Origin: Malacoraja senta
Taxonomy: Eukaryota
Direction: 5' to 3'
Length of the DNA stretch: 64,000 bases
Assembly: GCA_038087875.1 (NCBI GenBank)
Contig: CM075985.1
Coordinates: 25,358,001-25,422,000 of the forward strand
The notes beneath the pieces are model-generated. The model saw nothing but the letters and a program-made list of their open reading frames with translations, was not told the DNA's origin and ran no database searches. Below, one piece after another: positions 1 to 23,348 of the stretch. The number at the start of each line of letters is the position of its first letter. The first letter of the stretch is position 1. The position numbers and the translations under genes were made by a program.

Positions 1-397
1 TTATCAAGGACCGAAATTATGAAAAGACATTGTGATTTTTCAAAGAAAGTTCTGAACTCCTTTATTGATCCATTTTGGAAAAATCATTGAGCACAAACAA
101 AACTGTTTAACAGCGTTGCCATGACCAAAAACTCCCGAAATAGTGGAAGAGGCGAAGGGAAGAGACCTTTTCTATAAAAGTGCCAGCCTCTATGCTATTT
201 TTAAAATTATTTAGGCAACCAGCACCAAAAGGCCACCTTAATATGGTAGAGGCTTCTATATTTTCGTGGTGAGAAACTACATTTTTTGAATAAAGGAATG
301 AACAAATATTCCTGAAGAGGGTGCTGTGTAGACCTTCACTAAACAAAGCACAGTCCTAAAGGAAAAGCTAACAAGATTGATAGATGATGTTACTAAC

Positions 398-439
398 CTG
401 ATGTAGTGCTGGTGGTGGTCTCAGTTGTTGGTGTCGTTT
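398..439 (-). CDS. MUC19: PTS micro-exon A, unit 1 (ETTPTTETTTSTTS)
   Basis: 42 nt, ttctttctttcactag acceptor, gttagt donor, phase 1-1. Confidence 0.85.
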
Positions 440-916
440 CTAGTGAAAGAAAGAATGCTGTATTCAAGTGGAGCAGCCAAGAGGAATTGGTACACGGTTA
501 TAAAGCCATCAACAGCAATTCATGAGCTGGCACATTTAATGAAAGTGTTTTAATATGTAGATTGGTTACTTCTTAATAATATATGCAAAGATAAACTGCT
601 CAGCAACAACAGACTGTGTCCCCCGCGGCCTCTCCACGGCGTTCAGCGCCCAGCTCGCCTATTTCACCACCTCAACTCGGTGGGTCTCCGGTGATGGCCC
701 CGGTCACTTCCCCGGTCACTTCCCTGTCATTTCACCAGTGAATTGAATAAAGCATGCGGCCATACTATACGGCTGCATTACTTTTTCCTTGTCAATCAGC
801 AGCTGAATATTTCAGGGCCATCATAAACAATTTCAATTTCTTAATGTACCAACTTCAGATTTTGTGGAAGCTCAGCAAGTATTCTAAGAACTACTGATCA
901 GAAATTTAGAACATAA

Positions 917-1052
917 GGAGCGGTAAAGTGCCACAGCTGGTGCAACTCCTACCTCACAGCACCAGAGAATTCAGATTGATTTGTTCCACAGGTGTTGTGT
1001 GCATGGAGATTACATGTACTCCTGTTGTGTGTGCCTTTCCTACAAGTGTCTG
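917..1052 (+). mobile_element. Degenerate tRNA-derived V-SINE/HE1-like 5' head, repeated beside every B, D and E exon (also ~2084-2215, ~2580-2715 and later units)
   Basis: cctcacagcaccagaga...gtgtgcatggagattacatgtactcctg aligns by eye with the SINE at 51973. Confidence 0.7.
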
Positions 1053-1070
1053 AAATATATTGTCACTAAC

Positions 1071-1121
1071 CTGATGTAGTACTGGTTGTGGTCTCAGTTG
1101 TTGATGTAGTTGTTGGTGTTT
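1071..1121 (-). CDS. MUC19: PTS micro-exon B, unit 1 (ETPTTTSTTETTTSTTS)
   Basis: 51 nt (54 nt to 1124 with CAG), gttagt donor, phase 1-1. Confidence 0.85.
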
Positions 1122-1811
1122 CTACTGAAAGAAAATAATGCAATATTCAACCAAGGCAGCCAAGAGGAATTGGTATACACCTAACAATTGGTAGTCAGGA
1201 AAACATCAGCAGGAATTCATATGCTGGCACACTTTATTAAAATGTTTAACAGATGGCATTTTTGTTCTTCGTAGAATAAAATGGCAGGCCAAATTATATC
1301 TGATCAATCAGCAGCTGAATATTTCTGTGCCATCACAAATAAACCTGTTCTCTCTATATACCAGTTGCAGATTTCCTGGAAGATCAACCGTCTTCCAAAT
1401 ACCGCAAGGTCTACTTAATACCATATTTTCTAATACCATTATTCGTTGATCCATTTTTGAAAAATCTTTGAGCTGAAACAAAACTGTTTAACAGCGTTGC
1501 CATGACCAAAAACTCCCGGAATAGTGGAAGAGGCGAAGGGAAGAGACCTTTTCTATAAAAGTGAAAATCCTTATCCATATCTACTGTAAGGTGCCAGACT
1601 CAATTCACTTTTTAAATTATTATTGCAGGCAATCAGCACCAAAAGGCCTCCTTAATTCGGTAGTTGTTTCTATATTTTCTTGGTGAGAAACTACATTTTT
1701 GGAATAAAGCAATGAACAAATATTCCTGAAGAGGGTGCTATATAGAGCTTCACTAAACAAAGCACAGTCCTAAAGGAAAAGCTAACAAGATTGATAGATG
1801 ATGTTACTAAC

Positions 1812-1853
1812 CTGATGTAATGCTGGTGGTGGTCTCTGTTGTTGGTGTCGTTT
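1812..1853 (-). CDS. MUC19: PTS micro-exon C, unit 1 (ETTPTTETTTSITS)
   Basis: 42 nt, tag/gttagt, phase 1-1. Confidence 0.85.
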
Positions 1854-2233
1854 CTAGTGAAAAAAAAGAATGCTGTATTCAAGTGGGGCAGCCAAGAGGA
1901 ATTGGTACGCAGTTATAAAGCCATCAACAGGAATTCATGAGCTGGCATATTTTATGAAAACGTTTTACTAGTTGTCACTTTCTTCATCAGTCAATAAAGC
2001 ATGCGGCCATACTATATGGCTGCATTGATTTTTCCTCGTCTTTCAGAAATTGCAGCTGATCAGGCATTTAGTAAGATTGAGTTGGCACAGATGTGCAGCT
2101 GGTAGAGCTGCAGCCTCATAGTGTTAGAGATTTGTATTCTATCCTGACCTCGGTTGCTGTCTATGCTGGGATTGCACGTTCCCCTTTTCACTGCCTGTGA
2201 TCCCCCAAGTTTTTAACAGAGGATAATACTGAC

Positions 2234-2272
2234 CTGATGTTGTGGTGGTCCCAGATGTTGATGTAGTTGTTT
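2234..2272 (-). CDS. MUC19: PTS micro-exon D, unit 1 (ETTTSTSGTTTTS)
   Basis: 39 nt, tag/gtcagt, phase 1-1. Confidence 0.85.
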
Positions 2273-2733
2273 CTAGTGAAATAAAAAAATGTTATGTTCC
2301 ACTGAGACAAAGAAGAGGAATTGTTATGCAGTTTAGAATCCTTCAACAGGAATTTATCAACTGGCACCTTTTAATAAAACATTTTACACTTGATATTTCC
2401 TTATCAGTGATAAAGCGTGCGGCCATACAATGCGGCTGCATTACTTTTTCCTTGTCAATCAGCAGCTGAATATGTCAGGGCCATCACAAACAATTTCAAT
2501 TTCTTAATGTACCAACTTCCGATTTTGTGGAAGCTCAGCAAGTATTACAAGAACTACTGATCAGAAATTTAGAACATAAGGAGCGGTAAAGTGCCACAGC
2601 TGGTGCAACTCCTACCTTACAGCACCAGAGACTTCAGATTGATTTGTTCCATGGGTGTTGTGTGCATGGAGATTACATGTACTCCTGTTGTGTGTGCCTT
2701 TCCTACAAGTGTCAGAAATATATTGTCACTAAC

Positions 2734-2784
2734 CTGATGTAGTACTGGTAGTGGTCTCAGTTGATGATGTAGTTGTTGGTGTTT
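2734..2784 (-). CDS. MUC19: PTS micro-exon E, unit 1 (ETPTTTSSTETTTSTTS)
   Basis: 51 nt, tag/gttagt, phase 1-1. Confidence 0.85.
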
Positions 2785-3464
2785 CTAGTGAAAGAAAATA
2801 ATGGAATATTCAACCAAGACAGCCAAGAGGAATTGGTATACAGCTAACTATTGGTAGTCAGGAAACCATCAGCAGGAATTCATATGCTGGCACACTTTAT
2901 TAAAATGTTTAACAGATGGCATTTTTGTTCTTCATAGAATAAAATTGTAGGGCAAAACATACTTTTGATCAATCAGCAGCTGAATATTTCTGTGCCATCA
3001 CAAATAATCCTGTGCTATCTATACACCAGTTGCAGATTTCCTGGAAGATCAACCGTCTTCCAAAGACCGCAAGGTCTACTTAATACCATAATTTCTAATA
3101 GTATGGAATGTGTGTACTATGGGTAAGCATGTCTGTTCATATGTCCCATTGATACATGATTCTCAACTTGCATAAAATGTGTTCATATTAATCATGGTTT
3201 TGTTTTTTGCTACGGAATGTCCGAAGAAATAGAGAAGCAGAAAACACCAACACATATCCTCCACAAATCTGAACTATTTTGAAATTGTGTCATAATTTGG
3301 TACAATTGTTATGAGCCAAACATTGACATCTTAACGTGTATATTTGCACAATTTATGCCAATAATGTAAGCAAAGATGCAAGAAGTAAGTCACAGAGCTG
3401 ATGTTAGAAATGTTGTTTCATTGTCTTTGATTTGCCAATGTTTATGGAAAGTGGTTTGACTCAC

Positions 3465-3527
3465 CTGTTGTGGAACTGGAGGTGGACTCAGTTGTACCAG
3501 TTGTCAAAGATGTTGTTGGTGTTGTTC
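3465..3527 (-). CDS. MUC19: PTS micro-exon F, unit 1 (GTTPTTSLTTGTTESTSSSTT)
   Basis: 63 nt, aag/gtgagt, phase 1-1. Confidence 0.85.
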
Positions 3528-4120
3528 CTTGAGAGCAAATAGAAAAGTATTTACAAATTGAATTGCAAGAGTCACCAATCAATTTCAGTACGATACTGCA
3601 CATTTTCCTGAGACTGGGCTGAATTTTAACAATGTTCATTGTTCGTGCCTAAGCAAAGGACATTTAGAAGTTAACCAAATTTTGCTTCGTCATTTATCAA
3701 GGACCGAAATAATGAAAAGACATTGTGATTTTTCAAAGAAAGTTCTGAACTCCTTTATTGATCCATTTTGGAAAAATCATTGAGCAGAAACAAAACTGTT
3801 TAACAGCGTTGCCATGACCAAAAACTCCCGGTATAGTGGAAGAGGCGAAGGGAAGAGACCTTTTCTATAAAAGTGAAAATCCTTATCCATGTCAACTGAA
3901 ACGTGTCAGCCTCAATGCTCTTTTTAAAATTATTTAGGCAACCAGCACCAAAAGGCCACCTTAATATGGTAGAGGCTTCTATATTTTCCTGGTGAGAAAC
4001 TACATTTTTTGAATAAAGGAATGAACAAATATTCCTGAAGAGGGTGCTGTGTAGAAGTTCACTAAACAAAGCACAGTCCTAAAGGAAAAGCTAACAAGAT
4101 TGATAGATGATGTTACTAAC

Positions 4121-4162
4121 CTGATGTAGTGCTGGTGGTGGTCTCAGTTGCTGGTGTCGTTT
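4121..4162 (-). CDS. MUC19: PTS micro-exon A, unit 2 (variant ETTPATETTTSTTS)
   Basis: 42 nt, tag/gttagt. Confidence 0.85.
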
Positions 4163-4793
4163 CTAGTGAAAGAAAGAATGCTGTATTCAAGTGGAGCAGC
4201 CAAGAGGAATTGGTACACAGTTATAAAGCCATCAACAGCAATTCATGAGCTGGCACATTTTATGAAAGTGTTTTAATATGTAGATTGGTTACTTCTTAAT
4301 AATATATGCAAAGATAAACTGCTCAGCACCAACAGACTGTGTCCCCCGCGGCCTCTCCACGGCGTTTAGCGCCCAGCTCGCCTATTTCACCACCTCAACT
4401 CGGTGGGTCTCCGGTGATGGCCCCGGTCACTTCCCCGGTCACTTCCCCGTCATTTCACCAGTGAATTGTATAAAGCATGCGGCCATACTATACGGCTGCA
4501 TTACTTTTTCCTTGTCAATCAGCAGCTGAATATTTCAGGGCCATCATAAACAATTTCAATTTCTTAATGTACCAACTTCAGATTTTGTGGAAGCTCAGCA
4601 AGTATTCTAAGAACTACTGATCAGAAATTTAGAACATAAGGAGCGGTAAAGTGCCACAGCTGGTGCAACTCCTACCTCACAGCACCAGAGAATTCAGATT
4701 GATTTTTTCTACAGGTGTTGTGTGCATGGAGATTACATGTACTCCTGTTGTGTGTGCCTTTCCTACAAGTGTCAGAAATATATTGTCACTAAC

Positions 4794-4847
4794 CTGATGT
4801 AGTACTGGTTGTGGTCTCAGTTGTTGATGTAGTTGTTGGTGTTTCTT
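4794..4847 (-). CDS. MUC19: PTS micro-exon B, unit 2 (CAGAAG tandem acceptor; 54 or 51 nt)
   Basis: gttagt donor; acceptor boundary at 4847 (CAG) or 4844 (AAG). Confidence 0.82.
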
Positions 4848-5534
4848 CTGAAAGAAAATAATGCAATATTCAACCAAGGCAGCTAAGAGGAATTGGTATA
4901 CACCTAACTATTGGTAGTCAGGAAACCATCAGCAGGAATTCATATGCTGGCACACTTTAGTAAAATGTTTAACATATGGCATTTTTGTTCTTCCTAGAAT
5001 AAAATGGCAGGCCAAATTATATCTGATCAATCAGCAGCTGAATATTTCTGTGCCATCACAAATAAACCTGTTCTCTCTATATACCAGTTGCAGATTTCCT
5101 GGAAGATCAACCGTCTTCCAAATACCACAAGGTCTACTTAATACCATATTTTCTAATACCATTATTCGTTGATCCATTTTTGAAGAATCTTTGAGCTGAA
5201 ACAAAACTGTTTAACAGCGTTGACATGACCAAAAACTCCCGGAATAGTGGCAGAGGCGAAGGGAAGAGACCTTTTCTATAAAAGTGAAAATCCATATCCA
5301 TATCTACTGTAAGGTGCCAGACTGAATTTACTTTTTAAATTATTATTGCAGGCAATCAGCACCAAAAGGCCTCCTTAATTCGGTAGTTGTTTCTATATTT
5401 TCTTGGTGAGAAACTACATTTTTGGAATAAAGCAATGAACAAATATTCCTGACGAGGGTGCTATATAGAGCTTCACTAAACAAAGCACAGTCCTAAAGGA
5501 AAAGCTAACAAGATTGATAGATGATGTTACTAAC

Positions 5535-5576
5535 CTGATGTAATGCTGGGGATGGTCTCTGTTGTTGGTGTCGTTT
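5535..5576 (-). CDS. MUC19: PTS micro-exon C, unit 2 (variant ETTPTTETIPSITS)
   Basis: 42 nt, tag/gttagt. Confidence 0.85.
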
Positions 5577-5956
5577 CTAGTGAAAAAAAAGAATGCTGTA
5601 TTCAAGTGGGGCAGCCAAGAGGAATTGGTACGCAGTTATAAAGCCATCAACAGGAATTCATGAACTGGCATATTTTATGAAAACGTTTTACTAGTTGTCA
5701 CTTTCTTCATCAGTCAATAAAGCATGTGGCCATAATATATGGCGGCATTGATTTTTCCTCGTCTTTCAGAAATTGCAGGTGATCAGGCATTTAGTAAGAT
5801 TGAGTTGGCACAGATGTGCAGCTGGTAGAGCTGCAGCCTCATAGTGTTAGAGATTTGTATTCTATCCTGACCTCGGTTGCTGTCTATGCTGGGATTGCAC
5901 GTTCTCCTTTTCACTGCCTGTGATGCCCCAAGTTTTTAACAGAGGATGATACTGAC

Positions 5957-5995
5957 CTGATGTTGTGGTGGTCCCAGATGTTGATGTAGTTGTTT
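5957..5995 (-). CDS. MUC19: PTS micro-exon D, unit 2
   Basis: 39 nt, tag/gtcagt. Confidence 0.85.
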
Positions 5996-6442
5996 CTAGT
6001 GAAATAAAAAAAATGTTATGTTCCACTGAGACAAACAAGAGGAATTGTTATGCAGTTTAGAATCCTTCAACAGGAATTTATCAACTGGCACCTTTTAATA
6101 AAACATTTTACACTTGATATTTCCTTATCAGTGAATAAAGCGTGCGGCCATTACTTTTTCCTTGTCAATCAGCAGCTGAATATGTCAGGGCATCACAAAC
6201 AATTTCAATTTCTTAATGTACCAACTTCAGATTTTTTGGAAGCTCAGCAAGTATTCCAAGAACTACTGATCAGAAATTTAGAATATAAGGAGCGGTAAAG
6301 TGCCACAGCTGGTGCAACTCCTACCTCACAGCACCAGAGACTTCAGATTGATTTGTTCCATGGGTGTTGTGTGCATGGAGATTAAATGTACTCCTGTTAT
6401 GTGTGCCTTTCCTACAAGTGTCAGAAATATATTGTCACTAAC

Positions 6443-6493
6443 CTGATGTAGTACTGGTAGTGGTCTCAGTTGATGATGTAGTTGTTGGTGTTT
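6443..6493 (-). CDS. MUC19: PTS micro-exon E, unit 2
   Basis: 51 nt, tag/gttagt. Confidence 0.85.
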
Positions 6494-7173
6494 CTAGTGA
6501 AAGAAAATAATGCAATATTCAACCAAGACAGCCAAGAGGAATTGGTATACAGCTAACTATTGGTAGTCAGGAAACCATCAGCAGGAATTCATATGCTGGC
6601 ACACTTTATTAAAATGTTTAACAGAAGGCATTTTTGTTCTTCATAGAATAAAATTGTAGGGCAAAACATACTTTTGATCAATCAGCAGCTGAATATTTCT
6701 GTGCCATCACAAATAATCCTGTGCTATCTGTACACCAGTTGCGGATTTCCTGGAAGATCAACCGTCTTCCAAAGACCGCAAGGTCTACTTAATACCATAA
6801 TTTCTAATAGTATGGAATGTGTGTACTATGGGTAAGCATGTCTGTTCATATGTCCCATTGATACATGATTCTCAACTTGCATAAAATGTGTTCATATTAA
6901 TCATGGTTTTGTTTTTTGCTACGGAATGTCCGAAGAAATAGAGAAGCAGAAAACACCAACACATATCCTCCACAAATCTGAACTATTTTGAAATTGTGTC
7001 ATAATTTGGTCCAATTGTTATGGGTCAAACATTGACATCTTAACGTGTATATTTGCACAATTTATGCCAATAATGTGAGCAAAGATGCAAGAAGTAAGTC
7101 ACAGAGCTGATGTTAGAAATGTTGTTTCATTGTCTTTGATTTGCCAATGTTTATGGAAAGTGGTTTGACTCAC

Positions 7174-7236
7174 CTGTTGTGGAACTGGAGGTGGACTCAG
7201 TTGTACCAGTTGTCAAAGATGTTGTTGGTGTTGTTC
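7174..7236 (-). CDS. MUC19: PTS micro-exon F, unit 2
   Basis: 63 nt, aag/gtgagt. Confidence 0.85.
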
Positions 7237-7829
7237 CTTGAGAGCAAATAGAAAAGCATTTACAAATTGAATTGCAAGAGTCACCAATCAATTTCAGTAC
7301 GATACTGCACATTTTCCTGAGACTGGGCTGAATTTTAACAATGTTCATTGTTCGTGCCTAAGCAAAGGACATTTAGAAGTTAACCAAATATTGCTTCGTC
7401 ATTTATCAAGGACCGAAATTATGAAAAGATATTGTGATTTTTCAAAGAAAGTTCTGAACACCTTTATTGAACCATTTTGGAAAAATCATTGAGCAGAAAC
7501 AAAACTGTTTAACAGCGTTGCCATGACCAAAAAATCCCAGAATAGTGGAAGAGGCGAAGGGAAGAGACCTTTTCTATAAAAGTGAAAATCCTTATCCATG
7601 TCAACTGAAAAGTGCCAGCCTCAATGCTCTTTTTAGAATTATTTAGGCAACCAGCACCAAAAGGCCACCTTAATATGGTAGAGGCTTCTATATTTTCGTG
7701 GTGAGAAACTACATTTTTTTAATAAAGCAATGAACAAATATTCCTGAAGAGGGTGCTGTGTAGAACTTCAATAAACAAAGCACAGTCCTAACGGAAAAGC
7801 TAACAAGATTGATAGATGATGTTACTAAC

Positions 7830-7871
7830 CTGATGTAGTGCTGGTGGTGGTCTCAGTTGTTGGTGTCGTTT
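7830..7871 (-). CDS. MUC19: PTS micro-exon A, unit 3
   Basis: 42 nt, tag/gttagt. Confidence 0.85.
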
Positions 7872-8502
7872 CTAGTGAAAGAAAGAATGCTGTATTCAAG
7901 TGGAGCAGCCAAGAGGAATTGGTACACAGTTATAAAGCCATCAACAGCAATTCATGAGCTGGCACATTTTATGAAAGTGTTTTAATATGTAGATTGGTTA
8001 CTTCTTAATAATATATGCAAAGATAAACTGCTCAGCAACAACAGATTGTGTCCCCCGCGGCCTCTCCACGGCGTTCAGCGCCCAGCTCGCCTATTTCACC
8101 ACCTCAACTCGGTGGGTCTCTGGAGATGGCCCCGGTCACTTCCCCGGTCACTTCCCCGTCGTTTCACCAGTGAATTGAATAAAGCATGCGGCCATACTAT
8201 ACGGCTGCATTACTTTTTCCTTGTCAATCAGCAGCTGAATATTTCAGGGCCATCATAAACAATTTCAATTTCTTAATGTACCAACTTCACATTTTGTGGA
8301 AGCTCAGTAAGTATTCTAAGAACTACTGATCAGAAATTTAGAACATAAGGAGCGGTAAAGTGCCACAGCTGGTGCAACTCCAACCTCACAGCACCAGAGA
8401 ATTCAGATTGATTTGTTCCACAGGTGTTGTGTGCATGGAGATTACATGTACTCCTGTTGTGTGTGCCTTTCCTACAAGTGTCTGAAATATATTGTCACTA
8501 AC

Positions 8503-8553
8503 CTGCTGTAGTACTGGTTGTGGTCTCAGTTGTTGATGTAGTTGTTGGTGTTT
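8503..8553 (-). CDS. MUC19: PTS micro-exon B, unit 3 (last Ser changed to Ala)
   Basis: 51/54 nt, cagtag/gttagt. Confidence 0.85.
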
Positions 8554-10962: not shown

Positions 10963-11554
10963 CTTGAGAGCAAATCGAAAAGCATTTACAAATTGAATTG
11001 CAAGAGTCACCAATCAATTTCAGTACGATACTGCACATTTTCCTGAGACTGGGCTGAATTTTAACAATGTTCATTGTTCGTGCCTAAGCAAAGGACATTT
11101 AGAAGTTAACCAAATTTTGCTTCGTCATTTATCAAGGACCGAAATTATGAAAAGACAATGTGATTTTTCAAAGAAAGTTCTGAACTCCTTTATTGATCCA
11201 TTTTGGAAAAATCATTGAGCAGAAACAAAACTGTTTAACAGCGTTGCCATGACCAAAAACTCCTGGAATAGTGGAAGAGGCGAAGGGAAGAGACCTTTTC
11301 TATAAAAATGAAAATCCTTATCCATGTCAACTGAAAAGTGCCAGCCTCAATGCTCTTTTTAAATTATTGTAGGCAACCAGCACCAAAAGATCTCCTTAAT
11401 TTGGTAGTTGCTTTTATATTTTCGTGGTGAGAAACTACATTTTAGAATAAAGCAATGAACACATTTTCCTGAAGAGGGTGCTATATAGAGCTTCACTAAA
11501 CAAAGCACAGTCCTAAAGGAAAAGCTGACAAGATTGATTGATGATGTTACTAAC

Positions 11555-11596
11555 CTGCTGTAGTGCTGGTGGTGGTCTCAGTTGTTGGTGTTGTTT
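11555..11596 (-). CDS. MUC19: PTS micro-exon, A/C intermediate, short unit 4 (ETTPTTETTTSTTA)
   Basis: 42 nt, tag/gttagt. Confidence 0.85.
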
Positions 11597-11976
11597 CTAG
11601 TGAAAGAAAATATTGCTGTATTGAAGTGGGGCAGCCAATAGGAATTGGTACACAGTTATAAAGCCATCAACAGGAATTCATGAGCTGGCATATTTAATGA
11701 AAACGTTTTACTAGTTGTCACTTTCTTCATCAGTCAATAAAGCATGCGGCCATACTATATGGCTGCATTGATTTTTCCTCGTCTTTCAGAAATTGCAGGT
11801 GATCAGGCATTTAGTAAGATTGAATTGGAACAGATGTGCAGCTGGTAGAGCTGCAGCCTCATAGTGTTAGAGATTTGTATTCTATCCTGACCTCGGTTGC
11901 TGTCTATGCTGGGATTGCACATTCTCCTTTTCACTGCCTGTGATCCCCCAAGTTTCTAACAGAGGATGATACTGAC

Positions 11977-12015
11977 CTGATGTTGTGGTGGTCCCAGATG
12001 TTGATGTAGTTGTTT
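11977..12015 (-). CDS. MUC19: PTS micro-exon D, short unit 4
   Basis: 39 nt, tag/gtcagt. Confidence 0.85.
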
Positions 12016-12478
12016 CTAGTGAAATAAGAAAATGTTATGTTCCACTGACACAAACAAGAGGAATTGTTATGCAGTTTAGAATCCTTCAACAGGAATTTAT
12101 CAACTGGCACCTTTTAATAAAACATTTTACACTTGATATTTCCTTATCAGTGAATAAAGCGTGCGGCCATACAATGCGGCTGCATTACTTTTTCCTTGTC
12201 AATCAGCAGCTGAATATGTCAGGGCCATCACAAACAATTTCAATTTCTTAATGTACCAACTTCAGATTTTGTGGAAGCTCAGCAAGTATTCCAAGAACTA
12301 CTGATCAGGAATTTATAACATAAGGAGCGGTAAAGTGCCACAGCTGGTGCAACTCCTACCTCACAGCACCAGAGACTTCAGATTGATTTGTTCCATGGGT
12401 GTTGTGTGCATGGAGATTACATGTACTCCCTGTTATGTGTGCCTTTCGTACAAGTATCAAAAATATATTGTCACTAAC

Positions 12479-12529
12479 CTGATGTAGTACTGGTAGTGGT
12501 CTCAGTTGATGATGTAGTTGTTGGTGTTT
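12479..12529 (-). CDS. MUC19: PTS micro-exon E, short unit 4
   Basis: 51 nt, tag/gttagt. Confidence 0.85.
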
Positions 12530-13209
12530 CTAGTGAAAGAAAATAATGCAATATTTAACCAAGACAGCCAAGAGGAATTGGTATACAGCTAACTATTGGT
12601 AGTCAGGAAACCATCAGTAGGAATTCAGATGCTGGCACACTTTATTAAAATGTTTAACAGATGGCATTTTTGTTCTTCATAGAATAAAATTGTAGGGCAA
12701 AACATACTTTTGATCAATCAGCAGCTGAATATTTCTGTGCCATCACAAATAATCCTGTGCTATCTATACACCAGTTGCGGATTTCCTGGAAGATCAACCG
12801 TCTTCCAAAGACCGCAAGGTCTACTTAATACCATAATTTCTAATAGTATGGAATGTGTGTACTATGGGTAAGCATGTCTGTTCATATGTCCCATTGATAC
12901 ATGATTCTCAACTTGCATGAAATGTGTTCATATTAATCATGGTTTTGTTTTTTGCTACGGAATGTCCGAAGAAATAGAGAAGCAGAAAACACCAACACAT
13001 ATCCTCCACAAATCTGAACTATTTTGAAATTGTGTCATAATTTGGTACAATTGTTATGAGCCAAACATTGACATCTTAACGTGTATATTTGCACAATTTA
13101 TGCCAATAATGTAAGCAAAGATGCAAGAAGTAAGTCACAGAGCTGATGTTAGAAATGTTGTTTCATTGTCTTTGATTTGCCAATGTTTATGGAAAGTGGT
13201 TTGACTCAC

Positions 13210-13272
13210 CTGTTGTGGAACTGGAGGTGGACTCAGTTGTACCAGTTGTCAAAGATGTTGTTGGTGTTGTTC
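13210..13272 (-). CDS. MUC19: PTS micro-exon F, short unit 4
   Basis: 63 nt, aag/gtgagt. Confidence 0.85.
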
Positions 13273-13835
13273 CTTGAGAGCAAATAGAAAAGCATTTACA
13301 AATTGAATTGCAAGAGTCACCAATCAATTTCAGTACGATACTGCACATTTTCCTGAGACTGGGCTGAATTTTAACAATGTTCATTGTTTGTGCCTAAGCA
13401 AAGGACATTTAGAAGTTAACCAAATTTTGCTTCCTCAGTTATCAAGGACCGAAATTATGAAAAGACATTGTGATTTTTCAAAGAAAGTTCTGAACTCCTT
13501 TATTGATCCATTTTGGAAAAATCATTGAGCACAAACAAAACTGTTTAACAGCGTTGCCATGACCAAAAACTACTGGAATAGTGGAAGAGGCGAAGGGAAG
13601 AGATCTTTTCTATAAAAGTGCCAGCCTCTATGCTCTTTTTAAAATTATTTAGGCAACCAGCACCAAAAGGCCACCTTAATATGGTAGAGGCTTCTATATT
13701 TTCGTGGTGAGAAACTACATTTTTTGAATAAAGGAATGAACAAATATTCCTGAAGAGGGTGCTGTGTAGAACTTCACTAAACAAAGCACAGTCCTAAAGG
13801 AAAAGCTAACAAGATTGATAGATGATGTTACTAAC

Positions 13836-14508: not shown

Positions 14509-14559
14509 CTGATGTAGTACTGGTTGTGGTCTCAGTTGTTGATGTAGTTGTTGGTGTTT
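14509..14559 (-). CDS. MUC19: PTS micro-exon B, unit 5
   Basis: 51/54 nt, cagtag/gttagt. Confidence 0.85.
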
Positions 14560-15249
14560 CTACTGAAAGAAAATAATGTAATATTCAACCAAGGCAGCCA
14601 AGAGGAATTGGTATACACCAAACTATTGGTAGTCAGGAAACCATCAGCAGGAATTCATATGCTGGCACACTTTATTAAAATGTTTAACAGATGGCATTTT
14701 TGTTCTTCGTAGAATAAAATGGCAGGCCAAATTATATCTGATCAATCAGCAGCTGAATATTTCTGTGCCATCACAAATAAACCTGTTCTCTCTATATACC
14801 AGTTGCAGATTTCATGGAAGATCAACCGTCTTCCAAATACCGCAAGGTCTACTTAATACCATATTTTCTAATACCATTATTCGTTGATCCATTTTTGAAA
14901 AATCTTTGAGCTGAAACAAAACTGTTTAACAGCGTTGCCATGACCAAAAACTCCCGGAATAGTGGAAGAGGCGAAGGGAAGAGACCTTTTCTATAAAAGT
15001 GAAAATCCTTATCCATGTCTACTGTAAGGTGCCAGACTCAATTCACTTTTTAAATTATTATTGCAGGCAATCAGCACCAAAAGGCCTCCTTAATTCGGTA
15101 GTTGTTTCTATATTTTCTTGGTGAGAAACTACATTTTTGGAATAAAGCAATGAACAAATATTCCTAAAGAGGGTGCTATATAGAGCTTCACTAAACAAAG
15201 CACAGTCCTAAAGGAAAAGCTAACAAGATTGATAGATGATGTTACTAAC

Positions 15250-15291
15250 CTGATGTAATGCTGGTGGTGGTCTCTGTTGTTGGTGTCGTTT
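15250..15291 (-). CDS. MUC19: PTS micro-exon C, unit 5
   Basis: 42 nt, tag/gttagt. Confidence 0.85.
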
Positions 15292-15671
15292 CTAGTGAAC
15301 AAAAAGAATGCTGTGTTCAAGTGGGGCAGCCAAGAGGAATTGGTACGCAGTTATAAAGCCATCAACAGGAATTCATGAGCTGGCATATTTTATGAAAACG
15401 TTTTACTAGTTGTCACTTTCTTCATCAGTCAATAAAGCATGCGGCCATACTATATGGCTGCATTGATTTTTCCTCGTCTTTCAGAAATTGCAGCTGATCA
15501 GGCATTTAGTAAGATTGAGTTGGCACAGATGTGCTGCCGGTAGAGCTGCAGCCTCATAGTGTTAGAGATTTGTATTCTATCCTGACCTCGGTTGCTGTCT
15601 ATGCTGGGATTGCACGTTCTCCTTTTCACTGCCTGTGATCCCCCAAGTTTTTAACAGAGGATGATACTGAC

Positions 15672-15710
15672 CTGATGTTGTGGTGGTCCCAGATGTTGAT
15701 GTAGTTGTTT
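15672..15710 (-). CDS. MUC19: PTS micro-exon D, unit 5
   Basis: 39 nt, tag/gtcagt. Confidence 0.85.
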
Positions 15711-16159
15711 CTAGTGAAATACAAAAAAATGTTATGTTCCACTGAGACAAACAAGAGGAATTGTTATGCAGTTTAGAATCCTTCAACAGGAATTTATCAA
15801 CTGGCACCTTTTAATAAAACATTTTACACTTGATATTTCCTTATCAGTGAAAAAAGCGTGCGGCCATACAATGCGGCTGCATTACTTTTTCCTTGTCAAT
15901 CAGCAGCTGAATATGTCAGGGCCATCACAAACAATTTCAATTTCTTAATGTACCAACTTCAGATTTTGTGGAAGCTCAGCAAGTATTCCAAGAACTACTG
16001 AACAGAAATTTAGAACATAAGGAGCGGTAAAGTGCCACAGCTGGTGCAACTCCTACCTCAAGCACCAGAGACTTCAGATTGATTTGTGAGCATGGAGATT
16101 ACATGTACTCCTGTTATGTGTACCTTTCCTACAAGTGTCAGAAATATATTGTCACTAAC

Positions 16160-16210
16160 CTGATGTAGTACTGGTAGTGGTCTCAGTTGATGATGTAGTT
16201 GTTGGTGTTT
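16160..16210 (-). CDS. MUC19: PTS micro-exon E, unit 5
   Basis: 51 nt, tag/gttagt. Confidence 0.85.
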
Positions 16211-16890
16211 CTAGTGAAAGAAAATAATGCAATATTCAACCAAGACAGCCAAGAGGAATTGGTATACAGCTAACTATTGGTAGTCAGGAAACCATCAGCA
16301 GGAATTCATATGCTGGCACACTTTATTAAAATATTTAACAGATGGCATTTTTGTTCTTCATAGAATAAAATTGTAGGGCAAAACATACTTTTGATCAATC
16401 AGCAGCTGAATATTTCTGTGCCATCACAAATAATCCTGTGCTATCTATACACCAGTTGCGGATTTACTGGAAGATCAACCGTCTTCCAAAGACCGCAAGG
16501 TCTACTTAATACCATAATTTCTAATAGTATGGAATGTGTGTACTATGGGCAAGCATGTCTGTTCATATGTCCCATTGATACATGATTCTCAACTTGCATA
16601 AAATGTGTTCCTATTAATCATGGTTTTGTTTTTTGCTACGGAATGTCCGAAGAAATAGAGAAGCAGAAAACACCAACACATATCCTCCACAAATCTGAAC
16701 TATTTTGAAATTGTGTCATAATTTGGTACAATTGTTATGAGCCAAACATTGACATCTTAACGTGTATATTTGCACAATTTATGCCAATAATGTAAGCAAA
16801 GATGCAAGAAGTAAGTCACAGAGCTGATGTTAGAAATGTTGTTTCATTGTCTTTGATTTGCCAATGTTTATGGAAAGTGGTTTGACTCAC

Positions 16891-16953
16891 CTGTTGTGGA
16901 ACTGGAGGTGGACTCAGTTGTACCAGTTGTCAAAGATGTTGTTGGTGTTGTTC
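16891..16953 (-). CDS. MUC19: PTS micro-exon F, unit 5
   Basis: 63 nt, aag/gtgagt. Confidence 0.85.
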
Positions 16954-17546
16954 CTTGAGAGCAAATAGAAAAGCATTTACAAATTGAATTGCAAGAGTCA
17001 CCAATCAATTTCAGTACGATACTGCACATTTTCCTGAGACTGGGCTGAATTTTAACAATGTTAATTGTTCGTGCCTAAGCAAAGGACATTTAGAAGTTAA
17101 CCAAATTTTGCTTCGTCATTTATCAAAGACCGAAATTATGAAAAGACATTGTGATTTTTCAAAGAAAGTTCTGAACTCCTTTATTGATCCATTTTGGAAA
17201 AATCATTGAGCAGAAACAAAACTGTTTAACAGCGTTGCCATGACCAAAAACTCCCGGAATAGTGGAAGAGGCGAAGGGAAGAGACCTTTTCTATAAAAGT
17301 GAAAATCCTTATCCATGTCAACTGAAAAGTGCCAGCCTCAATGCTCTTTTTAAAATTATTTAGGCAACCAGCACCAAAACGCCACTTTAATATGATAGAG
17401 GCTTCTATATTTTCGTGGTGAGAAACTACATTTTTTGAATAAAGGAATGAACAAATATTCCTGAAGAGGGTGCTGTGTAGAACTTCACTAAACAAAGCAC
17501 AGTCCTAAAGGAAAAGCTAACAAGATTGATAGATGATGTTACTAAC

Positions 17547-17588
17547 CTGATGTAGTGCTGGTGGTGGTCTCAGTTGTTGGTGTCGTTT
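17547..17588 (-). CDS. MUC19: PTS micro-exon A, unit 6
   Basis: 42 nt, tag/gttagt. Confidence 0.85.
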
Positions 17589-18207
17589 CTAGTGAAAGAA
17601 AGAATGCTGTATTCAAGTGGAGCAGCCAAGAGGAATTGGTACACAGTTATAAAGCCATCAACAGCAATTCATGAGCTGGCACATTTTATGAAAGTGTTTT
17701 AATATGTAGATTGGTTACTTCTTAATAATATATGCAAAGATAAACTGCTCAGCAACAACAGACTGTGTCCCCCGCGGCCTCTCCACGGCGTTCAGCGCCC
17801 AGCTCGCCTATTTCACCACCTCAACTCGGTGGGTCTCCGGTGATGGCCCCGGTCACTTCCCCGTCATTTCACCAGTGAATTGAATAAAGCATGCGGCCAT
17901 ACTATACGGCTGCATTACTTTTTCCTTGTCAATCAGCAGCTGAATATTTCAGGGCCATCATAAACAATTTCAATTTCTTAATGTACCAACTTCAGATTTT
18001 GTGGAAGCTCAGCAAGTATTCTAAGAACTACTGATCAGAAATTTAGAACATAAGGAGCGGTAAAGTGCCACAGCTGGTGCAACTCCTACCTCACAGCACT
18101 AGAGAATTCAGATTGATTTGTTCCACAGGTGTTGTGTGCATGGAGATTACATGTATTCCTGTTGTGTGTGCCTTTCCTACAAGTGTCTGAAATATATTGT
18201 CACTAAC

Positions 18208-18258
18208 CTGATGTAGTACTGGTTGTGGTCTCAGTTGTTGATGTAGTTGTTGGTGTTT
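18208..18258 (-). CDS. MUC19: PTS micro-exon B, unit 6
   Basis: 51/54 nt, cagtag/gttagt. Confidence 0.85.
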
Positions 18259-18948
18259 CTACTGAAAGAAAATAATGCAATATTCAACCAAGGCAGCCAA
18301 GAGGAATTGGTATACACCTAACTATTGGTAGTCAGGAAACCATCAGCAGGAATTCATATGCTGGCACACTTTATTAAAATGTTTAACAGATGGCATTTTT
18401 GTTCTTCGTAGAATAAAATGGCAGGCCAAATTATATCTGATCAATCAGCAGCTGAATATTTCTGTGCCATCACAAATAAACTTGTTCTCTCTATATACCA
18501 GTTGCAGATTTCCTGGAAGATCAACCGTCTTCCAAATACCGCAAGGTCTACTTAATACCATATTTTCTAATACCATTATTCGTTGATCCATTTTTGAAAA
18601 ATCTTTGAGCTGAAACAAAACTGTTTAACAGCGTTGCCATGACCAAAAACTCCCGGAATAGTGGAAGAGGCGAAGGGAAGAGACCTTTTCTATAAAAGTG
18701 AAAATCCTTATCCATATCTACTGTAAGGTGCCAGACTCAATTCACTTTTTAAATTATTATTGCAGGCAATCAGCACCAAAAGGCCTCCTTAATTCGGTAG
18801 TTGTTTCTATATTTTCTTGGTGAGAAACTACATTTTTGGAATAAAGCAATGAACAAATATTCCTGAAGAGGGTGCTATATAGAGCTTCACTAAACAAAAC
18901 ACAGTCCTAAAGGAAAATCTAACAAGATTGATAGATGATGTTACTAAC

Positions 18949-18990
18949 CTGATGTAATGCTGGTGGTGGTCTCTGTTGTTGGTGTCGTTT
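18949..18990 (-). CDS. MUC19: PTS micro-exon C, unit 6
   Basis: 42 nt, tag/gttagt. Confidence 0.85.
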
Positions 18991-19370
18991 CTAGTGAAAA
19001 AAAAGAATGCTGTATTCAAGTGGGGCAGCCAAGAGGAATTGGTACGCAGTTATATAGCCATCAACAGGAATTCATGAGCTGGCATATTTTATGAAAACGT
19101 TTTACTAGTTGTCACTTTCTTCATCAGTCAATAAAGCATGCGACCATACTATATGGCTGCATTGATTTTTCCTCGTCTTTCAGAAATTGCAGCTGATCAG
19201 GCATTTAGTAAGATTGAGTTGGCACAGATGTGCAGCTGGTAGAGCTGCAGCCTCATAGTGTTAGAGATTTGTATTCTATCCTGACCTCGGTTGCTGTCTA
19301 TGCTGGGATTGCACGTTCTCCTTTTCACTGCCTGTGATCCCCCAAGTTTTTAACAGAGGATGATACTGAC

Positions 19371-19409
19371 CTGATGTTGTGGTGGTCGCAGATGTTGATG
19401 TAGTTGTTT
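19371..19409 (-). CDS. MUC19: PTS micro-exon D, unit 6 (variant ETTTSTSATTTTS)
   Basis: 39 nt, tag/gtcagt. Confidence 0.85.
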
Positions 19410-19873
19410 CTAGTGAAATTAAAAAAATGTTATGTTCCACTGAGACAAACAAGAGGAATTGTTATGCAGTTTAGAATCCTTCAACAGGAATTTATCAACT
19501 GGCACCTTTTAATAAAACATTTTACACTTGATATTTCCTTATCAGTGAATAAAGCGTGCGGCCATACAATGCGGCTGCATTACTTTTTCCTTGTCAATCA
19601 GCAGCTGAATATGTCAGGGCCATCACAAACAATTTCAATTTCTTAATGTACCAACTTCCGATTTTGTGGAAGCTCAGCAAGTATTCCAAGAACTACTGAT
19701 CAGAAATTTAGAACATAAGGAGCGGTAAAGTGCCACAGCTGGAGCAACTCCTACCTCACAGCACCAGAGACTTCAGATTGATTTGTTCCATGGGTGTTGT
19801 GTGCATGGAGATTACATGTACTCCCTGTTATGTGTGCCTTTCCTACATGTGTCAGAAATATATTGTCACTAAC

Positions 19874-19924
19874 CTGATGTAGTACTGGTAGTGGTCTCAG
19901 TTGATGATGTAGTTGTTGGTGTTT
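19874..19924 (-). CDS. MUC19: PTS micro-exon E, unit 6
   Basis: 51 nt, tag/gttagt. Confidence 0.85.
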
Positions 19925-20604
19925 CTAGTGAAAGAAAATAATGCAATATTCAACCAAGACAGCCAAGAGGAATTGGTATAGAGCTAATTATTGGTAGTCA
20001 GGAAACCATCAGCAGGAATTCATATGCTGGCACACATTATTAAAATGTTTAACAGATGGCATTTTTGTTCTTCATAGAATAAAATTGTAGGGCAAAACAT
20101 ACTTTTGATCAATCAGCAGCTGAATATTTCTGTGCCATCACAAATAATCCTGAGCTATCTATATACCAGTTGCGGATTTCCTGGAAGATCAACCGTCTTC
20201 CAAAGACCGCAAGGTCTACTTAATACCATAATTTCTAATAGTATGGAATGTGTGTACTATGGGTAAGCATGTCTGTTCATATGTCCCATTGATACATGAT
20301 TCTCAACTTGCATAAAATGTGTTCATATTAATCATGGTTTTGTTTTTTGCTACGGAATGTCCGAAGAAATAGAGAAGCAGAAAACACCAACACATATCCT
20401 CCACAAATCTGAACTATTTTGAAATTGTGTCATAATTTGGTACAATTGTTATGAGCCAAACATTGACATCTTAACGTGTATATTTGCACAATTTATGCCA
20501 ATAATGTGAGCAAAGATGCAAGAAGTAAGTCACAGAGCTGATGTTAGAAATGTTGTTTCATTGTCTTTGATTTGCCAATGTTTATGGAAAGTGGTTTGAC
20601 TCAC

Positions 20605-20667
20605 CTGTTGTGGAACTGGAGGTGGACTCAGTTGTACCAGTTGTCAAAGATGTTGTTGGTGTTGTTC
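20605..20667 (-). CDS. MUC19: PTS micro-exon F, unit 6
   Basis: 63 nt, aag/gtgagt. Confidence 0.85.
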
Positions 20668-21603
20668 CTTGAGAGCAAATAGAAAAGCATTTACAAATTG
20701 AATTGCAAGAGTCACCAATCAATTTCAGTACGATACTGCACATTTTCCCGAGACTGGGCTGAATTTTAACAATGTTCATTGTTCGTGCCTAAGCAAAGGA
20801 CATTTAGAAGTTAACCAAATTTTGCTTCGTCATTTATCAAGGACCGAAATTATGAAAAGACATTGTGATTTTTCAAAGAAAGTTCTGAACTCCTTTATTG
20901 ATCCATTTTGGAAAAATCATTGAGCTGAAACAAAACTGTTTAACAGCGTTGCCATGACCAAAAACTCCCGGAATAGTGGATGAGGCGAAGGGAATAGACC
21001 TTTTCTATAAAAGTGAAAATCCTTATCCATGTCAACTGAAAAGTGCCAGCCTCTATGCTCTTTTTAAAATTATTTAGGCAACCAGCACCAAAAGGCCACC
21101 TTAATATGGTAGAGGCTTCTATATTTTCGTGGTGAGCAACAACAGACTGTGTCCCCCGCGGCCTCTCCACGGCGTTGAGCACCCAGCTCGCCTATTTCAC
21201 CACCTCAACTCGGTGGGTCTCTGGTGATGGCCCCGGTCACTTCCCCGGTCACTTCCCCGTCATTTCACCAGTGAATTGAATAAAGCATGCGGCCATACTA
21301 TACGGCTGCATTACTTTTTCCTTGTCAATCAGCAGCTGAATATTTCAGGGCCATCATAAAGAATTTCAATTTCTTAATGTACCAACTTCAGATTTTGTGG
21401 AAGCTCAGCAAGTATTCTAAGAACTACTGATCAGAAATTTAGAACATAAGGAGCGGTAAAGTGCCACAGCTGGTGCAACTCCTACCTCACAGCACCAGAG
21501 ACTTCAGATTGATTTGTTCCACAGGTGTTGTGTGCATGGAGATTACATGTACTCCTGTTGTGTGTGCCTTTCCTACAAGTGTCTGAAATATATTGTCACT
21601 AAC

Positions 21604-21654
21604 CTGATGTAGTACTGGTTGTGGTCTCAGTTGTTGATGTAGTTGTTGGTGTTT
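21604..21654 (-). CDS. MUC19: PTS micro-exon B, edge unit 7
   Basis: 51 nt (54 with the upstream CAG), gttagt donor. Confidence 0.85.
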
Positions 21655-23348
21655 CTACTGAAAGAAAATAATGCAATATTCAACCAAGGCAGCCAAGAGG
21701 AATTGGTATAAACCTAACTATTGGTAGTCAGGAAACCATCAGCAGGAATTCATATGCTGGCACACTTTATTAAAATGTTTAACAGATGGCATTTTTGTTC
21801 TTCGTAGAATAAAATGGCAGGCCAAATTATATCTGATCAATCAGCAGCTGAATATTTCTGTGCCATCACAAATAATCCTATACTTTCTATACACCAGTTG
21901 CGGATTTCCTGGAAGATCAACCGTCTTCCAAAGACCGCAATGTCTACTTAATACCATATTTTCTAATACCATTATTCGTTGATCCATTTTTGAAAAATCA
22001 TTGAGCAGAAACAAAACTGTTTAACAGCGTTGCCATGACCAAAAACACCCGGAATAGTGGAAGAGGCGAAGGGAAGAGACCTTTTCTATAAAAGTGAAAA
22101 TCCATATCCATGTCAACTGAAAAGTGCCAGCCTCAATGCTCTTTTTATAATTATTGTAGGCAATCAGCACCAAAAGGCCTCCTTAATTTGGTAGAGGCTT
22201 CTATATTTTCATGGTATTTTTGTTCTTCATAGAATAAAATGGTCGGGCAAAATATACTTTTGATCAATCAGCAGCTGAATATTCTGTGCCATCACAAATA
22301 ATCCTGTTCTATCTATATACCAGTTGCGGAATTCCTGGAAGATCAACCGACTTCCAAAGACCGCAAGGTCTACTTAATACCATAATTTCTAATAGTATCG
22401 AATGAGTGGGGTAAGCATGTCTGTTCATATGTCCCATTGATACATGATTCTCAACTTGCGTAAAATGTGTTCATTATATTCATGGTTTTGATTTTTGCTA
22501 CGGAATGTCTGAAGAAATTGAGAAGCAGAAAACACCAACTAATTTCCTCCACAAATCCAAACTATTTTGAAATTGTGTCATAATTTGGTAAAATTATTTA
22601 CTTTATGCCATTATTACTAATAGTGTGTGATATGTCTGGGAATAATGTGCATTTATGTTCGCATATCCAAAAGTGACATGATCCCCAACCTGCACATAAT
22701 TTGCAGATTATAATTATGCATTTTTCTTGTTCCTGCTGAATATATGTGGAAATGAGAAACAGTAAATACCATAAAAAAATGTTCTTCCACATTTCCTATG
22801 TTTTACTAAGATTACATCATAACTTTATATAATTGATTTGAGGCAAACATTGAAATCTTGACATGTATGTTTGCACCATCTATCTCAATAATGTAAGCAA
22901 AGGTGCAAGAAGTAAGCCAGGGACCTGATCTTGCCTAGTTCCTTCGCTCCATAGCTGCTGCCTCACCTGCTGAGTTCCCTAGTTCTATCTTGGCTTCAGG
23001 TGCTGTCTGTGAGGAGTTTGCATGTTCTCCCTTTTACCATGTGGGTTCCCTCCAAGTGTTTGACAGATGTTGTTACTAACCTTGTTGTTACAAGGCAGCC
23101 AATAGGAATTGGTACGCAGTAAAGAAACTTCCAACAGTAATTCATCAGCTGGCACATTTTAATAAATCCTACACTCGAACAATCCTACACTCTTGACACT
23201 TCGATTGCGGATTTCATGAAGAATTTACAAGGCCCTTCTTAATTCAGAAGTTGTTCTCCTATTTTCCGAGTGAGAATTATTAAATATTTGCAGCAACACC
23301 ATGAACAAGCAAGAGGAAAATATAGAGCTTCACTTTAACGTTACTTAC

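What the first reader, a model, noticed from the sequence alone, without database searches (positions are those of the whole stretch)
1..21870. 3.7 kb exon-plus-intron macrosatellite acting as a coding VNTR (96 aa per unit)
Seen: each unit has six exons, transcribed F-E-D-C-B-A, totalling 288 coding nt (under 8% of the unit). The unit peptide is GTTPTTSLTTGTTESTSSSTT ETPTTTSSTETTTSTTS ETTTSTSGTTTTS ETTPTTETTTSITS ETPTTTSTTETTTSTTS ETTPTTETTTSTTS. Introns are about as similar between units as exons. I found no unit-specific TE insertion in ~21 kb, whereas the rest of the gene has many. Inference: recent expansion or ongoing concerted evolution, with the introns supplying long homology for unequal crossover.
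Basis: partly seen in the sequence, partly recalled or inferred. Interest (0 to 1): 0.8.

Follow-up and report, generated by a model that had tools for sequence, protein, structure and literature searches.

The report
Skate mucin core: micro-exon macrosatellite
The 3.7-kb repeat is real and coding. It is the near end of a roughly 126-kb tandem array whose ~200 tiny in-frame exons encode the sugar-carrying core of a MUC19-type mucus protein in a cartilaginous fish; the design has precedents in chicken, frog and shark mucins, and variation in copy number between individuals is untested.

Summary
Window 1-22215 holds tandem 3.7-kb units, each with six minus-strand exons of 63, 51, 39, 42, 51 and 42 nt (288 nt, 96 aa). 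All are phase 1-1 with AG/GT splice sites.

The window cuts the array. It runs another ~104 kb to the left: about 126 kb, 38 units, 203 micro-exons and 3282 aa, with 59% Thr, 20% Ser and no stop codon.

It lies between D-domain exons (VWD/C8/TIL, window 39-59 kb) and VWC-like plus cystine-knot exons, with no D4 assembly. That is a MUC19/MUC6-type gel-forming mucin. The nearest named relatives are elasmobranch and mammalian "mucin-19-like" proteins.

A probable RNA run covers only the exons and joins them at the predicted GT..AG borders. Exons carry no indels (0 of 288 columns, against 145 of 3454 in introns).

Nested multi-unit duplications (9.7, 20 and 46 kb at 99.2-99.9%) and species-specific variants shared by many copies support recent unequal crossover or homogenisation. 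Copy-number variation between individuals could not be tested.

Multi-exon mucin domains are known (chicken Muc13, Xenopus MucXS). A shark mucin-19-like gene model shows the same layout. This scan has already reported adjoining parts of this same array. It is a new member of a known kind.

The parts
1..22215 (-). The 5'-proximal ~22 kb (5 full units, one short unit, one partial) of a homogeneous 3.7-kb tandem array. The array continues about 104 kb beyond the window's left edge (G000:C9:25253900-25380215 in all).
   Evidence: Self-BLAST and unit BLAST; unit table.
3465..3527 (-). Exon F of the reference unit (63 nt, 21 aa beginning GTTPTTS). Repeated at 7174, 10900, 13210, 16891 and 20605.
   Evidence: AG acceptor, GTGAGT donor. 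A probable RNA run covers it.
2734..2784 (-). Exon E (51 nt, 17 aa).
   Evidence: The E->D joint 5995->6443 with CT..AC ends, seen in the neighbouring unit.
2234..2272 (-). Exon D (39 nt, 13 aa).
   Evidence: The D->A joint 4162->5957 with CT..AC ends.
1812..1853 (-). Exon C (42 nt, 14 aa). It is a sub-repeat copy of exon A.
   Evidence: Flanks of A and C are ~91% alike over 380-520 bp.
1071..1121 (-). Exon B (51 nt, 17 aa). It is a sub-repeat copy of exon E.
   Evidence: Flanks of B and E are ~94% alike over ~690 bp.
398..439 (-). Exon A (42 nt, 14 aa).
   Evidence: The A->next-F joint appears as a 'goes back' joint.
11263..13572 (-). Short four-exon unit (2310 bp). It lacks the 1413-bp segment that carries exons A and B.
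   Evidence: The same junction (3928->5342, skipping 1413) is seen in DNA contigs of two species, and is far more abundant in the second.
27281..32596 (-). Older, divergent copies of the unit (85-90% identical) with F-, E- and A-type exons.
23349..35946 (-). Unique Thr/Ser-rich micro-exons that link the D3 assembly to the array (for example 23349-23399, 25211-25273, 32995-33045, 35854-35946).
   Evidence: They are colinear with exons of a paralogue at C9:25667916-25697049.
39121..59425 (-). N-terminal D-assembly exons of the same gene: VWD, C8 and TIL pieces of D1 (part), D2, D' and D3.
   Evidence: Pfam hits. PDB matches to the D3 assemblies of MUC5AC, MUC2, MUC5B and VWF.

Best explanation
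The repeat is the central O-glycosylated (PTS) domain of a gel-forming, MUC19-type mucin gene of a cartilaginous fish, transcribed from the minus strand. Mammalian gel-forming mucins encode this domain in one giant repetitive exon. Here it is written as about 200 micro-exons of 39-63 nt. Each is a multiple of three and in phase 1-1, so any number of exons or units keeps the reading frame.

Six such exons and their ~600-bp introns form a 3.7-kb unit, repeated about 34-38 times over ~126 kb. The product is about 3300 residues of Thr/Ser-rich sequence, with a Glu or Gly at each exon junction.

The array grows, shrinks and stays homogeneous by out-of-register recombination between units and multi-unit blocks. 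The long, nearly identical introns give the homology for this (inferred).

Shown: the anatomy, the gene context, exon-only coverage with canonical joints in a probable RNA run, exclusion of indels from exons, and nested recent block duplications. Inferred: the recombination mechanism, heavy O-glycosylation, and length variation between individuals.
For: Anatomy:
- 203 exons with AG..GT, 9846 nt, 3282 aa, no stop; T 59%, S 20%, E 10%, P 5%.
- Splice signals were read directly.

Gene context:
- VWD/C8/TIL exons lie upstream.
- VWC-like and cystine-knot exons lie downstream at about window -109,500 to -116,000.
- There is no VWD between the array and the knot.
- A D3 exon is 54-59% identical to elasmobranch 'mucin-19-like' proteins and 53% to a marmot 'Mucin-19-like', against 44-50% for mucin-2/5AC/6-like models.

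Expression:
- Run X25 covers only the bins that hold exons.
- Its joints are 5995->6443, 4162->5957 and 4844->7174, all CT..AC on the plus strand, which is GT..AG on the minus strand. There is also an A->F 'goes back' joint.

Coding constraint: 0 of 288 exon columns have gaps, against 145 of 3454 intron columns.

Turnover:
- Blocks of 9722 bp (three copies, 99.89%), 20037 bp (two copies, 99.48%) and 13.4 kb at a 46.3-kb offset (99.24%), against a 97.6-98.3% background.
- A young TE insertion was co-duplicated with the 20-kb block.
- Several sites differ on all multi-copy contigs of species J and on none of species A.
- The flanks are 93-94% identical to a paralogue, while units within the array are ~98% alike.

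Copy number: in DNA run X1, near-identical contigs have word depths of 439-760, against 21-27 for ~10%-divergent contigs. That is roughly 20-30 copies.
Against: - X25 is only guessed to be RNA, and it carries a different species label from the best DNA holder. Its reads could come from an orthologue or paralogue.
- The only certain RNA run (X28, a related species, tissue unknown) gave almost no reads on the exons.
- Exon variants are 6 synonymous to 18 non-synonymous, which shows no purifying selection on residue identity.
- Two C exons have a GG in place of the AG acceptor.
- The assignment to MUC19 rests on automatic names and on architecture. A COR-A search for an LRRK2 neighbour found nothing on this contig.
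- The single-copy depth baseline used for the copy estimate is assumed, not measured.
Confidence: 0.82

Rival explanations
1. The assembly has over-expanded the array. The near-identical 9.7-kb and 20-kb blocks would be false duplications, and the true array would be shorter.
For: Some units are identical over 3.7 kb (distance 0.0). Blocks reach 99.89% identity. No reads spanning the array were available.
Against: - The blocks are not perfect copies: 18 and 87 mismatches respectively.
- Word depth in a DNA run is 16-35 times that of divergent copies, which matches the ~26-38 assembled copies.
- A related species also holds the unit in many copies.
Confidence: 0.1
2. The array is a decaying or silent copy. 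The RNA signal would come from a paralogue or orthologue with similar exons, so this locus would be a non-functional macrosatellite.
For: - At least one paralogue with near-identical exon peptides lies 300 kb away, within a large mucin cluster on the contig.
- X25 pieces are mostly 95-99% alike rather than identical.
- The synonymous to non-synonymous ratio looks neutral.
Against: - There is no stop codon in 3282 codons, and 203 of about 205 exon copies keep AG/GT.
- There are no indels in the exon columns, although introns have many.
- Intact D-domain and cystine-knot exons flank the array.
Confidence: 0.06
3. The micro-exons act as an alternative-splicing cassette that tunes mucin length within one animal, rather than being constitutive exons. 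This is not exclusive of the best explanation.
For: All exons are symmetric in phase 1-1. Joints D->A and E->B, which skip exons relative to the reference unit, occur in X25. The idea was raised for chicken Muc13 (PMC1552070).
Against: Those joints are also the genomic order in the short and variant units (FEDA, FBB). The genome behind X25 is unknown. No read shows two alternative partners for one identifiable exon.
Confidence: 0.1

Closest known systems
Chicken Muc13 and Xenopus MucXS (Otogl): mucins whose PTS domain is multi-exonic
   Same: The mucin domain is split into many small exons, each encoding one repeat. The exon sequences are nearly identical to one another (PMC1552070; PMC5789918).
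   Different: Muc13 is a transmembrane SEA mucin with at least 12 repeats of 20 aa. Here the gene is a gel-forming mucin, and a six-exon 3.7-kb higher-order unit is repeated about 34-38 times, giving 203 exons over 126 kb.
Mammalian gel-forming mucins MUC19/MUC6 (and MUC2, MUC5AC, MUC5B)
   Same: The architecture is D1-D2-D'D3, a PTS domain, then a C-terminal cystine knot. [quoted passage not shown] The PTS domain is a tandem repeat.
   Different: [quoted passage not shown] Here introns make up 92% of the repeat unit.
Heptranchias perlo mucin-19-like (XP_067860680.1)
   Same: [quoted passage not shown]
   Different: The repeat peptide and unit length differ. The gene model is truncated at 680 aa. 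No paper found in these searches describes it.
Human LPA kringle IV-2 coding VNTR
   Same: It is a kb-scale tandem unit of exons plus introns that adds an in-frame protein module per copy. The unit is 5.6 kb, with 1-40 units per allele (PMC11462820).
   Different: The KIV-2 unit encodes a folded kringle in two exons, and its copy-number polymorphism is proven. Here the unit has six low-complexity micro-exons and polymorphism is untested.

Membership tests
Gel-forming mucin, MUC19/MUC6 architecture | N-terminal VWD-C8-TIL assemblies (D1, D2, D'D3) | tested here: met
   Pfam VWD, C8 and TIL hits on minus-strand exons at 42649-59425. PDB hits to the D3 assemblies of MUC5AC, MUC2 and MUC5B. The VWD part of D1 was not located.
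Gel-forming mucin, MUC19/MUC6 architecture | Central Pro/Thr/Ser-rich domain | tested here: met
   3282 aa; T 59%, S 20%, P 5%; no stop codon.
Gel-forming mucin, MUC19/MUC6 architecture | C-terminal cystine knot and no fourth VWD assembly | tested here: met
   Cys_knot and DAN hits on L012:3976-4173 and L012:5375-5503. The single pieces score 23.3 bits against a cut-off of 24. No VWD-like ORF or Pfam VWD hit lies between the array and the knot.
MUC19 orthologue group | Groups with MUC19 in a phylogeny of the N-terminal region, or lies in conserved synteny | tested here: inconclusive
   The D3 exon is nearest to 'mucin-19-like' models of whale shark, sevengill shark, an electric ray and a marmot (53-59%), against 44-50% for models with other names. 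These names are automatic. No tree was built. The COR-A (LRRK2-type) search found no hit on contig C9.
Multi-exonic PTS mucins (Muc13/MucXS type) | Each PTS repeat lies in its own exon, with transcript support | tested here: met
   Splice sites and phases. Exon-only coverage and GT..AG joints in X25; the RNA status of that run is a guess.
Coding macrosatellite VNTR (LPA KIV-2 type) | In-frame kb-scale tandem unit of exons plus introns | tested here: met
   3.7-kb unit with 288 coding nt; 26 full-length copies at ~98% identity.
Coding macrosatellite VNTR (LPA KIV-2 type) | Unit number differs between individuals | not testable with these tools
   There is no second haplotype in the assembly.

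The most novel reading that the evidence does not exclude
Cartilaginous-fish MUC19-type mucins may build and resize their whole glycosylated core through intron-mediated unequal crossover of micro-exon macrosatellites. That would make mucin length hypervariable between individuals and species. With ~200 symmetric exons, length might also be adjustable by exon skipping within one animal. This would be one of the largest coding macrosatellites known in a vertebrate, and a second, intron-based route to mucin VNTRs alongside the single-exon route of mammals.
Probability: 0.3. Interest if true: 0.65.

Novelty: new member of a known kind. Interest (0 to 1): 0.45.

Why it matters
Papers on the human mucins describe the mucin domain as one large repetitive exon. 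This locus shows a gel-forming mucin where 92% of the repeating unit is intron, and where the domain's length is set by recombination between 3.7-kb units rather than by slippage inside an exon.

It also gives a clean natural example of concerted evolution of a coding macrosatellite, with nested higher-order blocks, a dated TE marker and a paralogue for comparison. It warns annotators that such 'satellites' in shark and ray genomes are expressed coding sequence that gene models tend to truncate.

Tried and rejected
- Tandem Repeats Finder found nothing, because its longest period is 500. A k-mer offset histogram and BLAST were used instead.
- My first regex exon finder mis-called acceptors and missed the 51- and 63-nt exons. 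It was replaced by fuzzy matching to the six reference exons.
- The protein-atlas look-up of a D3 exon returned only RING-finger noise.
- The COR-A search for an LRRK2 neighbour, a MUC19 synteny marker, gave hits only on other contigs.
- Cys-rich ORF scanning up to 30 kb right of the window did not reveal the D1 VWD exon or the first exon.
- RNA run X28, from a related species, gave almost no exon reads. Its few reads sit on SINE-like intron segments.
- A purely non-coding satellite was rejected on the splice signals, the indel-free exons and the exon-only coverage.
Full report
**1. What is in the sequence**

A 20-mer offset histogram peaks at about 3.7 kb and at sums of unit lengths. Self-BLAST shows tandem units of 3681-3726 bp at 97-98.5% identity from window 1 to about 22215. 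One unit, at 11263-13572, is only 2310 bp. Older copies at 85-90% identity lie at 27281-32596. TRF reports nothing only because its period limit is 500.

Six-frame translation finds Thr/Ser-rich segments almost exclusively on the minus strand. Reading one unit directly shows six exons of 63, 51, 39, 42, 51 and 42 nt. Each is preceded by a pyrimidine tract and CAG or TAG, and followed by GTGAGT, GTTAGT or GTCAGT.

Each exon ends with a G that begins the next codon (G|AA gives Glu, G|GA gives Gly). All exons are therefore in phase 1-1 and are multiples of three.

**2. The array is much larger than the finding**

The window is G000:C9:25358001-25422000 in a 1.94-Gb genome. Fetching 140 kb to the left shows that the same unit continues to about window -104,000.

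Fuzzy matching to the six reference exons, requiring AG and GT, finds 203 exons between window 32296 and -103256. Joined, they give 3282 codons without a stop: T 59%, S 20%, E 10%, P 5%.

There are 38 units delimited by exon F:
- 26 are full length.
- Four or five are short four-exon units.
- Two are 5.2-kb units.
- Two C exons have a GG in place of the AG acceptor.

**3. Gene context**

Upstream in the direction of transcription, minus-strand ORF pieces at 39121-59425 hit Pfam VWD, C8 and TIL in the order expected for D1 (part), D2, D' and D3. The C8-3 piece matches the D3 assemblies of MUC5AC, MUC2, MUC5B, FCGBP and VWF in the PDB.

Downstream of the array there are a VWC-like exon and two cystine-knot exons at about -109,500 to -116,000. 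No VWD lies between them and the array. According to Lang et al. [quoted passage not shown]

A profile-free search of 1.8 billion representatives with a D3 exon, followed by a name look-up, gave these nearest relatives:
- 'mucin-19-like' of Rhincodon and Heptranchias, 57% each.
- 'mucin-19-like' of Narcine, 54%.
- a marmot 'Mucin-19-like', 53%.
- models named mucin-2-like, mucin-5AC-like or mucin-6-like, 44-50%.

These names are automatic. A COR-A search for an LRRK2 neighbour found nothing on this contig. I therefore call the gene MUC19-type with moderate confidence.

The contig carries a large cluster of VWD genes between 24.8 and 27.5 Mb.

**4. Is it expressed and spliced?**

No run on record as RNA holds the stretch. 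Run X25 is guessed to be RNA and carries another species label. Laid on window 3400-7300, it covers only the bins that contain exons F', A, B, D, E and F, with zero depth in purely intronic bins.

Its contigs join:
- 5995 to 6443 (E to D).
- 4162 to 5957 (D to A).
- 4844 to 7174 (F to a 51-nt exon).

All have CT..AC ends on the plus strand, which is GT..AG on the minus strand. X25 also joins A back to F of the next unit.

DNA runs X1 and X26 cover exons and introns alike. A certain RNA run of a related species (X28) gave almost nothing.

The exon-only pattern with exact canonical joints is hard to explain other than by spliced RNA. The locus of origin could still be an orthologue or a paralogue.

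**5. Coding constraint**

In a MAFFT alignment of the 26 full units, no exon column contains a gap (0 of 288), against 145 of 3454 non-exon columns. Mean pairwise difference is 1.2% in exons and 1.9% in introns.

Exon variants are 6 synonymous and 18 non-synonymous, close to the roughly 1:3 expected without selection. Selection seems to preserve frame, splice sites and composition rather than residue identity. That fits an O-glycosylated low-complexity domain.

**6. How the array evolves**

The nearest relative of a unit is usually not its neighbour. Whole-array self-BLAST shows:
- a 9722-bp block present three times at 99.89% (18 mismatches in 15.9 kb).
- a 20,037-bp block present twice at 99.48%.
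- a 13.4-kb block repeated 46.3 kb away at 99.24%.
- a background of 97.6-98.3%.

These offsets are sums of whole unit lengths, as out-of-register exchange would give.

A 1.44-kb element has at least 40 genome-wide copies at 98-99% identity. It inserted into one unit and is now present, identically, in both copies of the 20-kb block. So the array does accept TE insertions, and that block duplication is very young.

The short unit lacks exactly the 1413 bp that separate the A-type and C-type sub-repeats. Its junction (3928 to 5342) appears at low depth in DNA of species A, and at high depth, on several contigs, in species J.

At several sites (for example 4225, 5082, 5477 and 5908) all multi-copy contigs of species J carry one base and all of species A carry another (table 3).

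The array's unique flanks occur once in the assembly. They match a paralogue about 300 kb away at 93-94%. That paralogue shares the proximal unique exons in the same order, yet its units are only 84-90% like ours. Units within the array (~98%) are therefore more alike than the duplicated flanks are.

Together these are the marks of homogenisation or expansion after both the gene duplication and the species split.

**7. Is the copy number an assembly artefact?**

In DNA run X1, contigs nearly identical to the unit have word depths of 439-760. Contigs about 10% divergent have depths of 21-27 (table 8). If the divergent contigs are single-copy, the array has roughly 16-35 copies, in line with the assembly. 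The baseline is assumed, and the run may come from the assembled animal. This argues against gross over-expansion but says nothing about polymorphism.

**8. Comparison with what is known**

[quoted passage not shown] A recent pangenome preprint states that all mucins harbour a large VNTR exon (PMC13345508).
- Exceptions are published. The PTS of chicken Muc13 is encoded by multiple exons, one repeat each, with alternative splicing suggested (PMC1552070). The mucin domain of Xenopus MucXS is multi-exonic (PMC5789918).
- I also checked a shark gene model. The PTS of Heptranchias perlo mucin-19-like maps to 48-60-nt exons inside a ~4.6-kb tandem unit that is 99% identical between neighbours. The layout is thus shared by sharks and skates, and is partly captured by automatic annotation. 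I found no paper that describes it.
- As a genomic object it works like the LPA KIV-2 coding VNTR, which has a 5.6-kb unit and 1-40 copies (PMC11462820).

**9. Earlier notes of this scan**

Follow-up reports on adjoining windows of this same array, and on a neighbouring gene, reached the same reading: a skate micro-exon mucin core, MUC19-type, with known precedents. I used them as leads. I re-derived the anatomy, the splicing evidence and the literature independently. New here are the full extent of the array, the higher-order block structure, the TE marker, the indel test, the paralogue and species comparisons, and the shark locus.

**10. Verdict**

It is unproven on polymorphism. It is a new and very large member of a known kind.

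Noticed in passing
L010:4460-5900 (C9:25262460-25263900) and C9:25282492-25283932: A 1.44-kb GC-rich interspersed repeat has at least 40 genome-wide copies at 98-99% identity, out of 1777 first-look candidates. It looks like a very young, possibly still active element. It is inserted in two array units that are 100% identical over 2 kb.
   Followed up: partly
G000:C9:25559234-25697049: A paralogous mucin gene lies about 300 kb away. Its flanks are 93-94% identical and its proximal unique exons are colinear with ours. It seems to have its own array with a ~4.6-kb period (matches at 25580789, 25585383 and 25590005). VWD-like hits at 25570160, 25604601 and 25648619 fall inside that interval and are unexplained.
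   Followed up: partly
G000:C9 24.83-27.49 Mb and 29.15-29.20 Mb; C3 39.6-40.8 Mb; C8 24.39-24.50 Mb: There are large clusters of VWD-domain exons. This suggests an expanded family of gel-forming mucin or FCGBP-like genes in this genome.
   Followed up: no
window 2560-2700, 940-1020 and 5800-5860 (introns): SINE-like segments sit inside the introns of both the B and E sub-repeats, so they predate the sub-repeat duplication. Reads from all DNA runs and from the RNA run X28 pile up there with loose ends, as expected for a high-copy element.
   Followed up: no
window -65580 and -85605 (outside the window; C9:25292420 and 25272395): Two C exons have GG instead of the AG acceptor while their coding sequence is intact. 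This is probable exon loss by splice-site mutation, and it was copied with the 20-kb block.
   Followed up: partly
window 44965-45480 and 47559-48424: Reverse-transcriptase-like ORFs of LINE-type elements lie in the introns of the D3 region.
   Followed up: no
L022:39848-53978 (Heptranchias perlo CM068660.1): The shark mucin-19-like gene model stops at 680 aa inside a 4.6-kb tandem array that runs off the fetched locus. The automatic model is probably truncated within its micro-exon array.
   Followed up: partly
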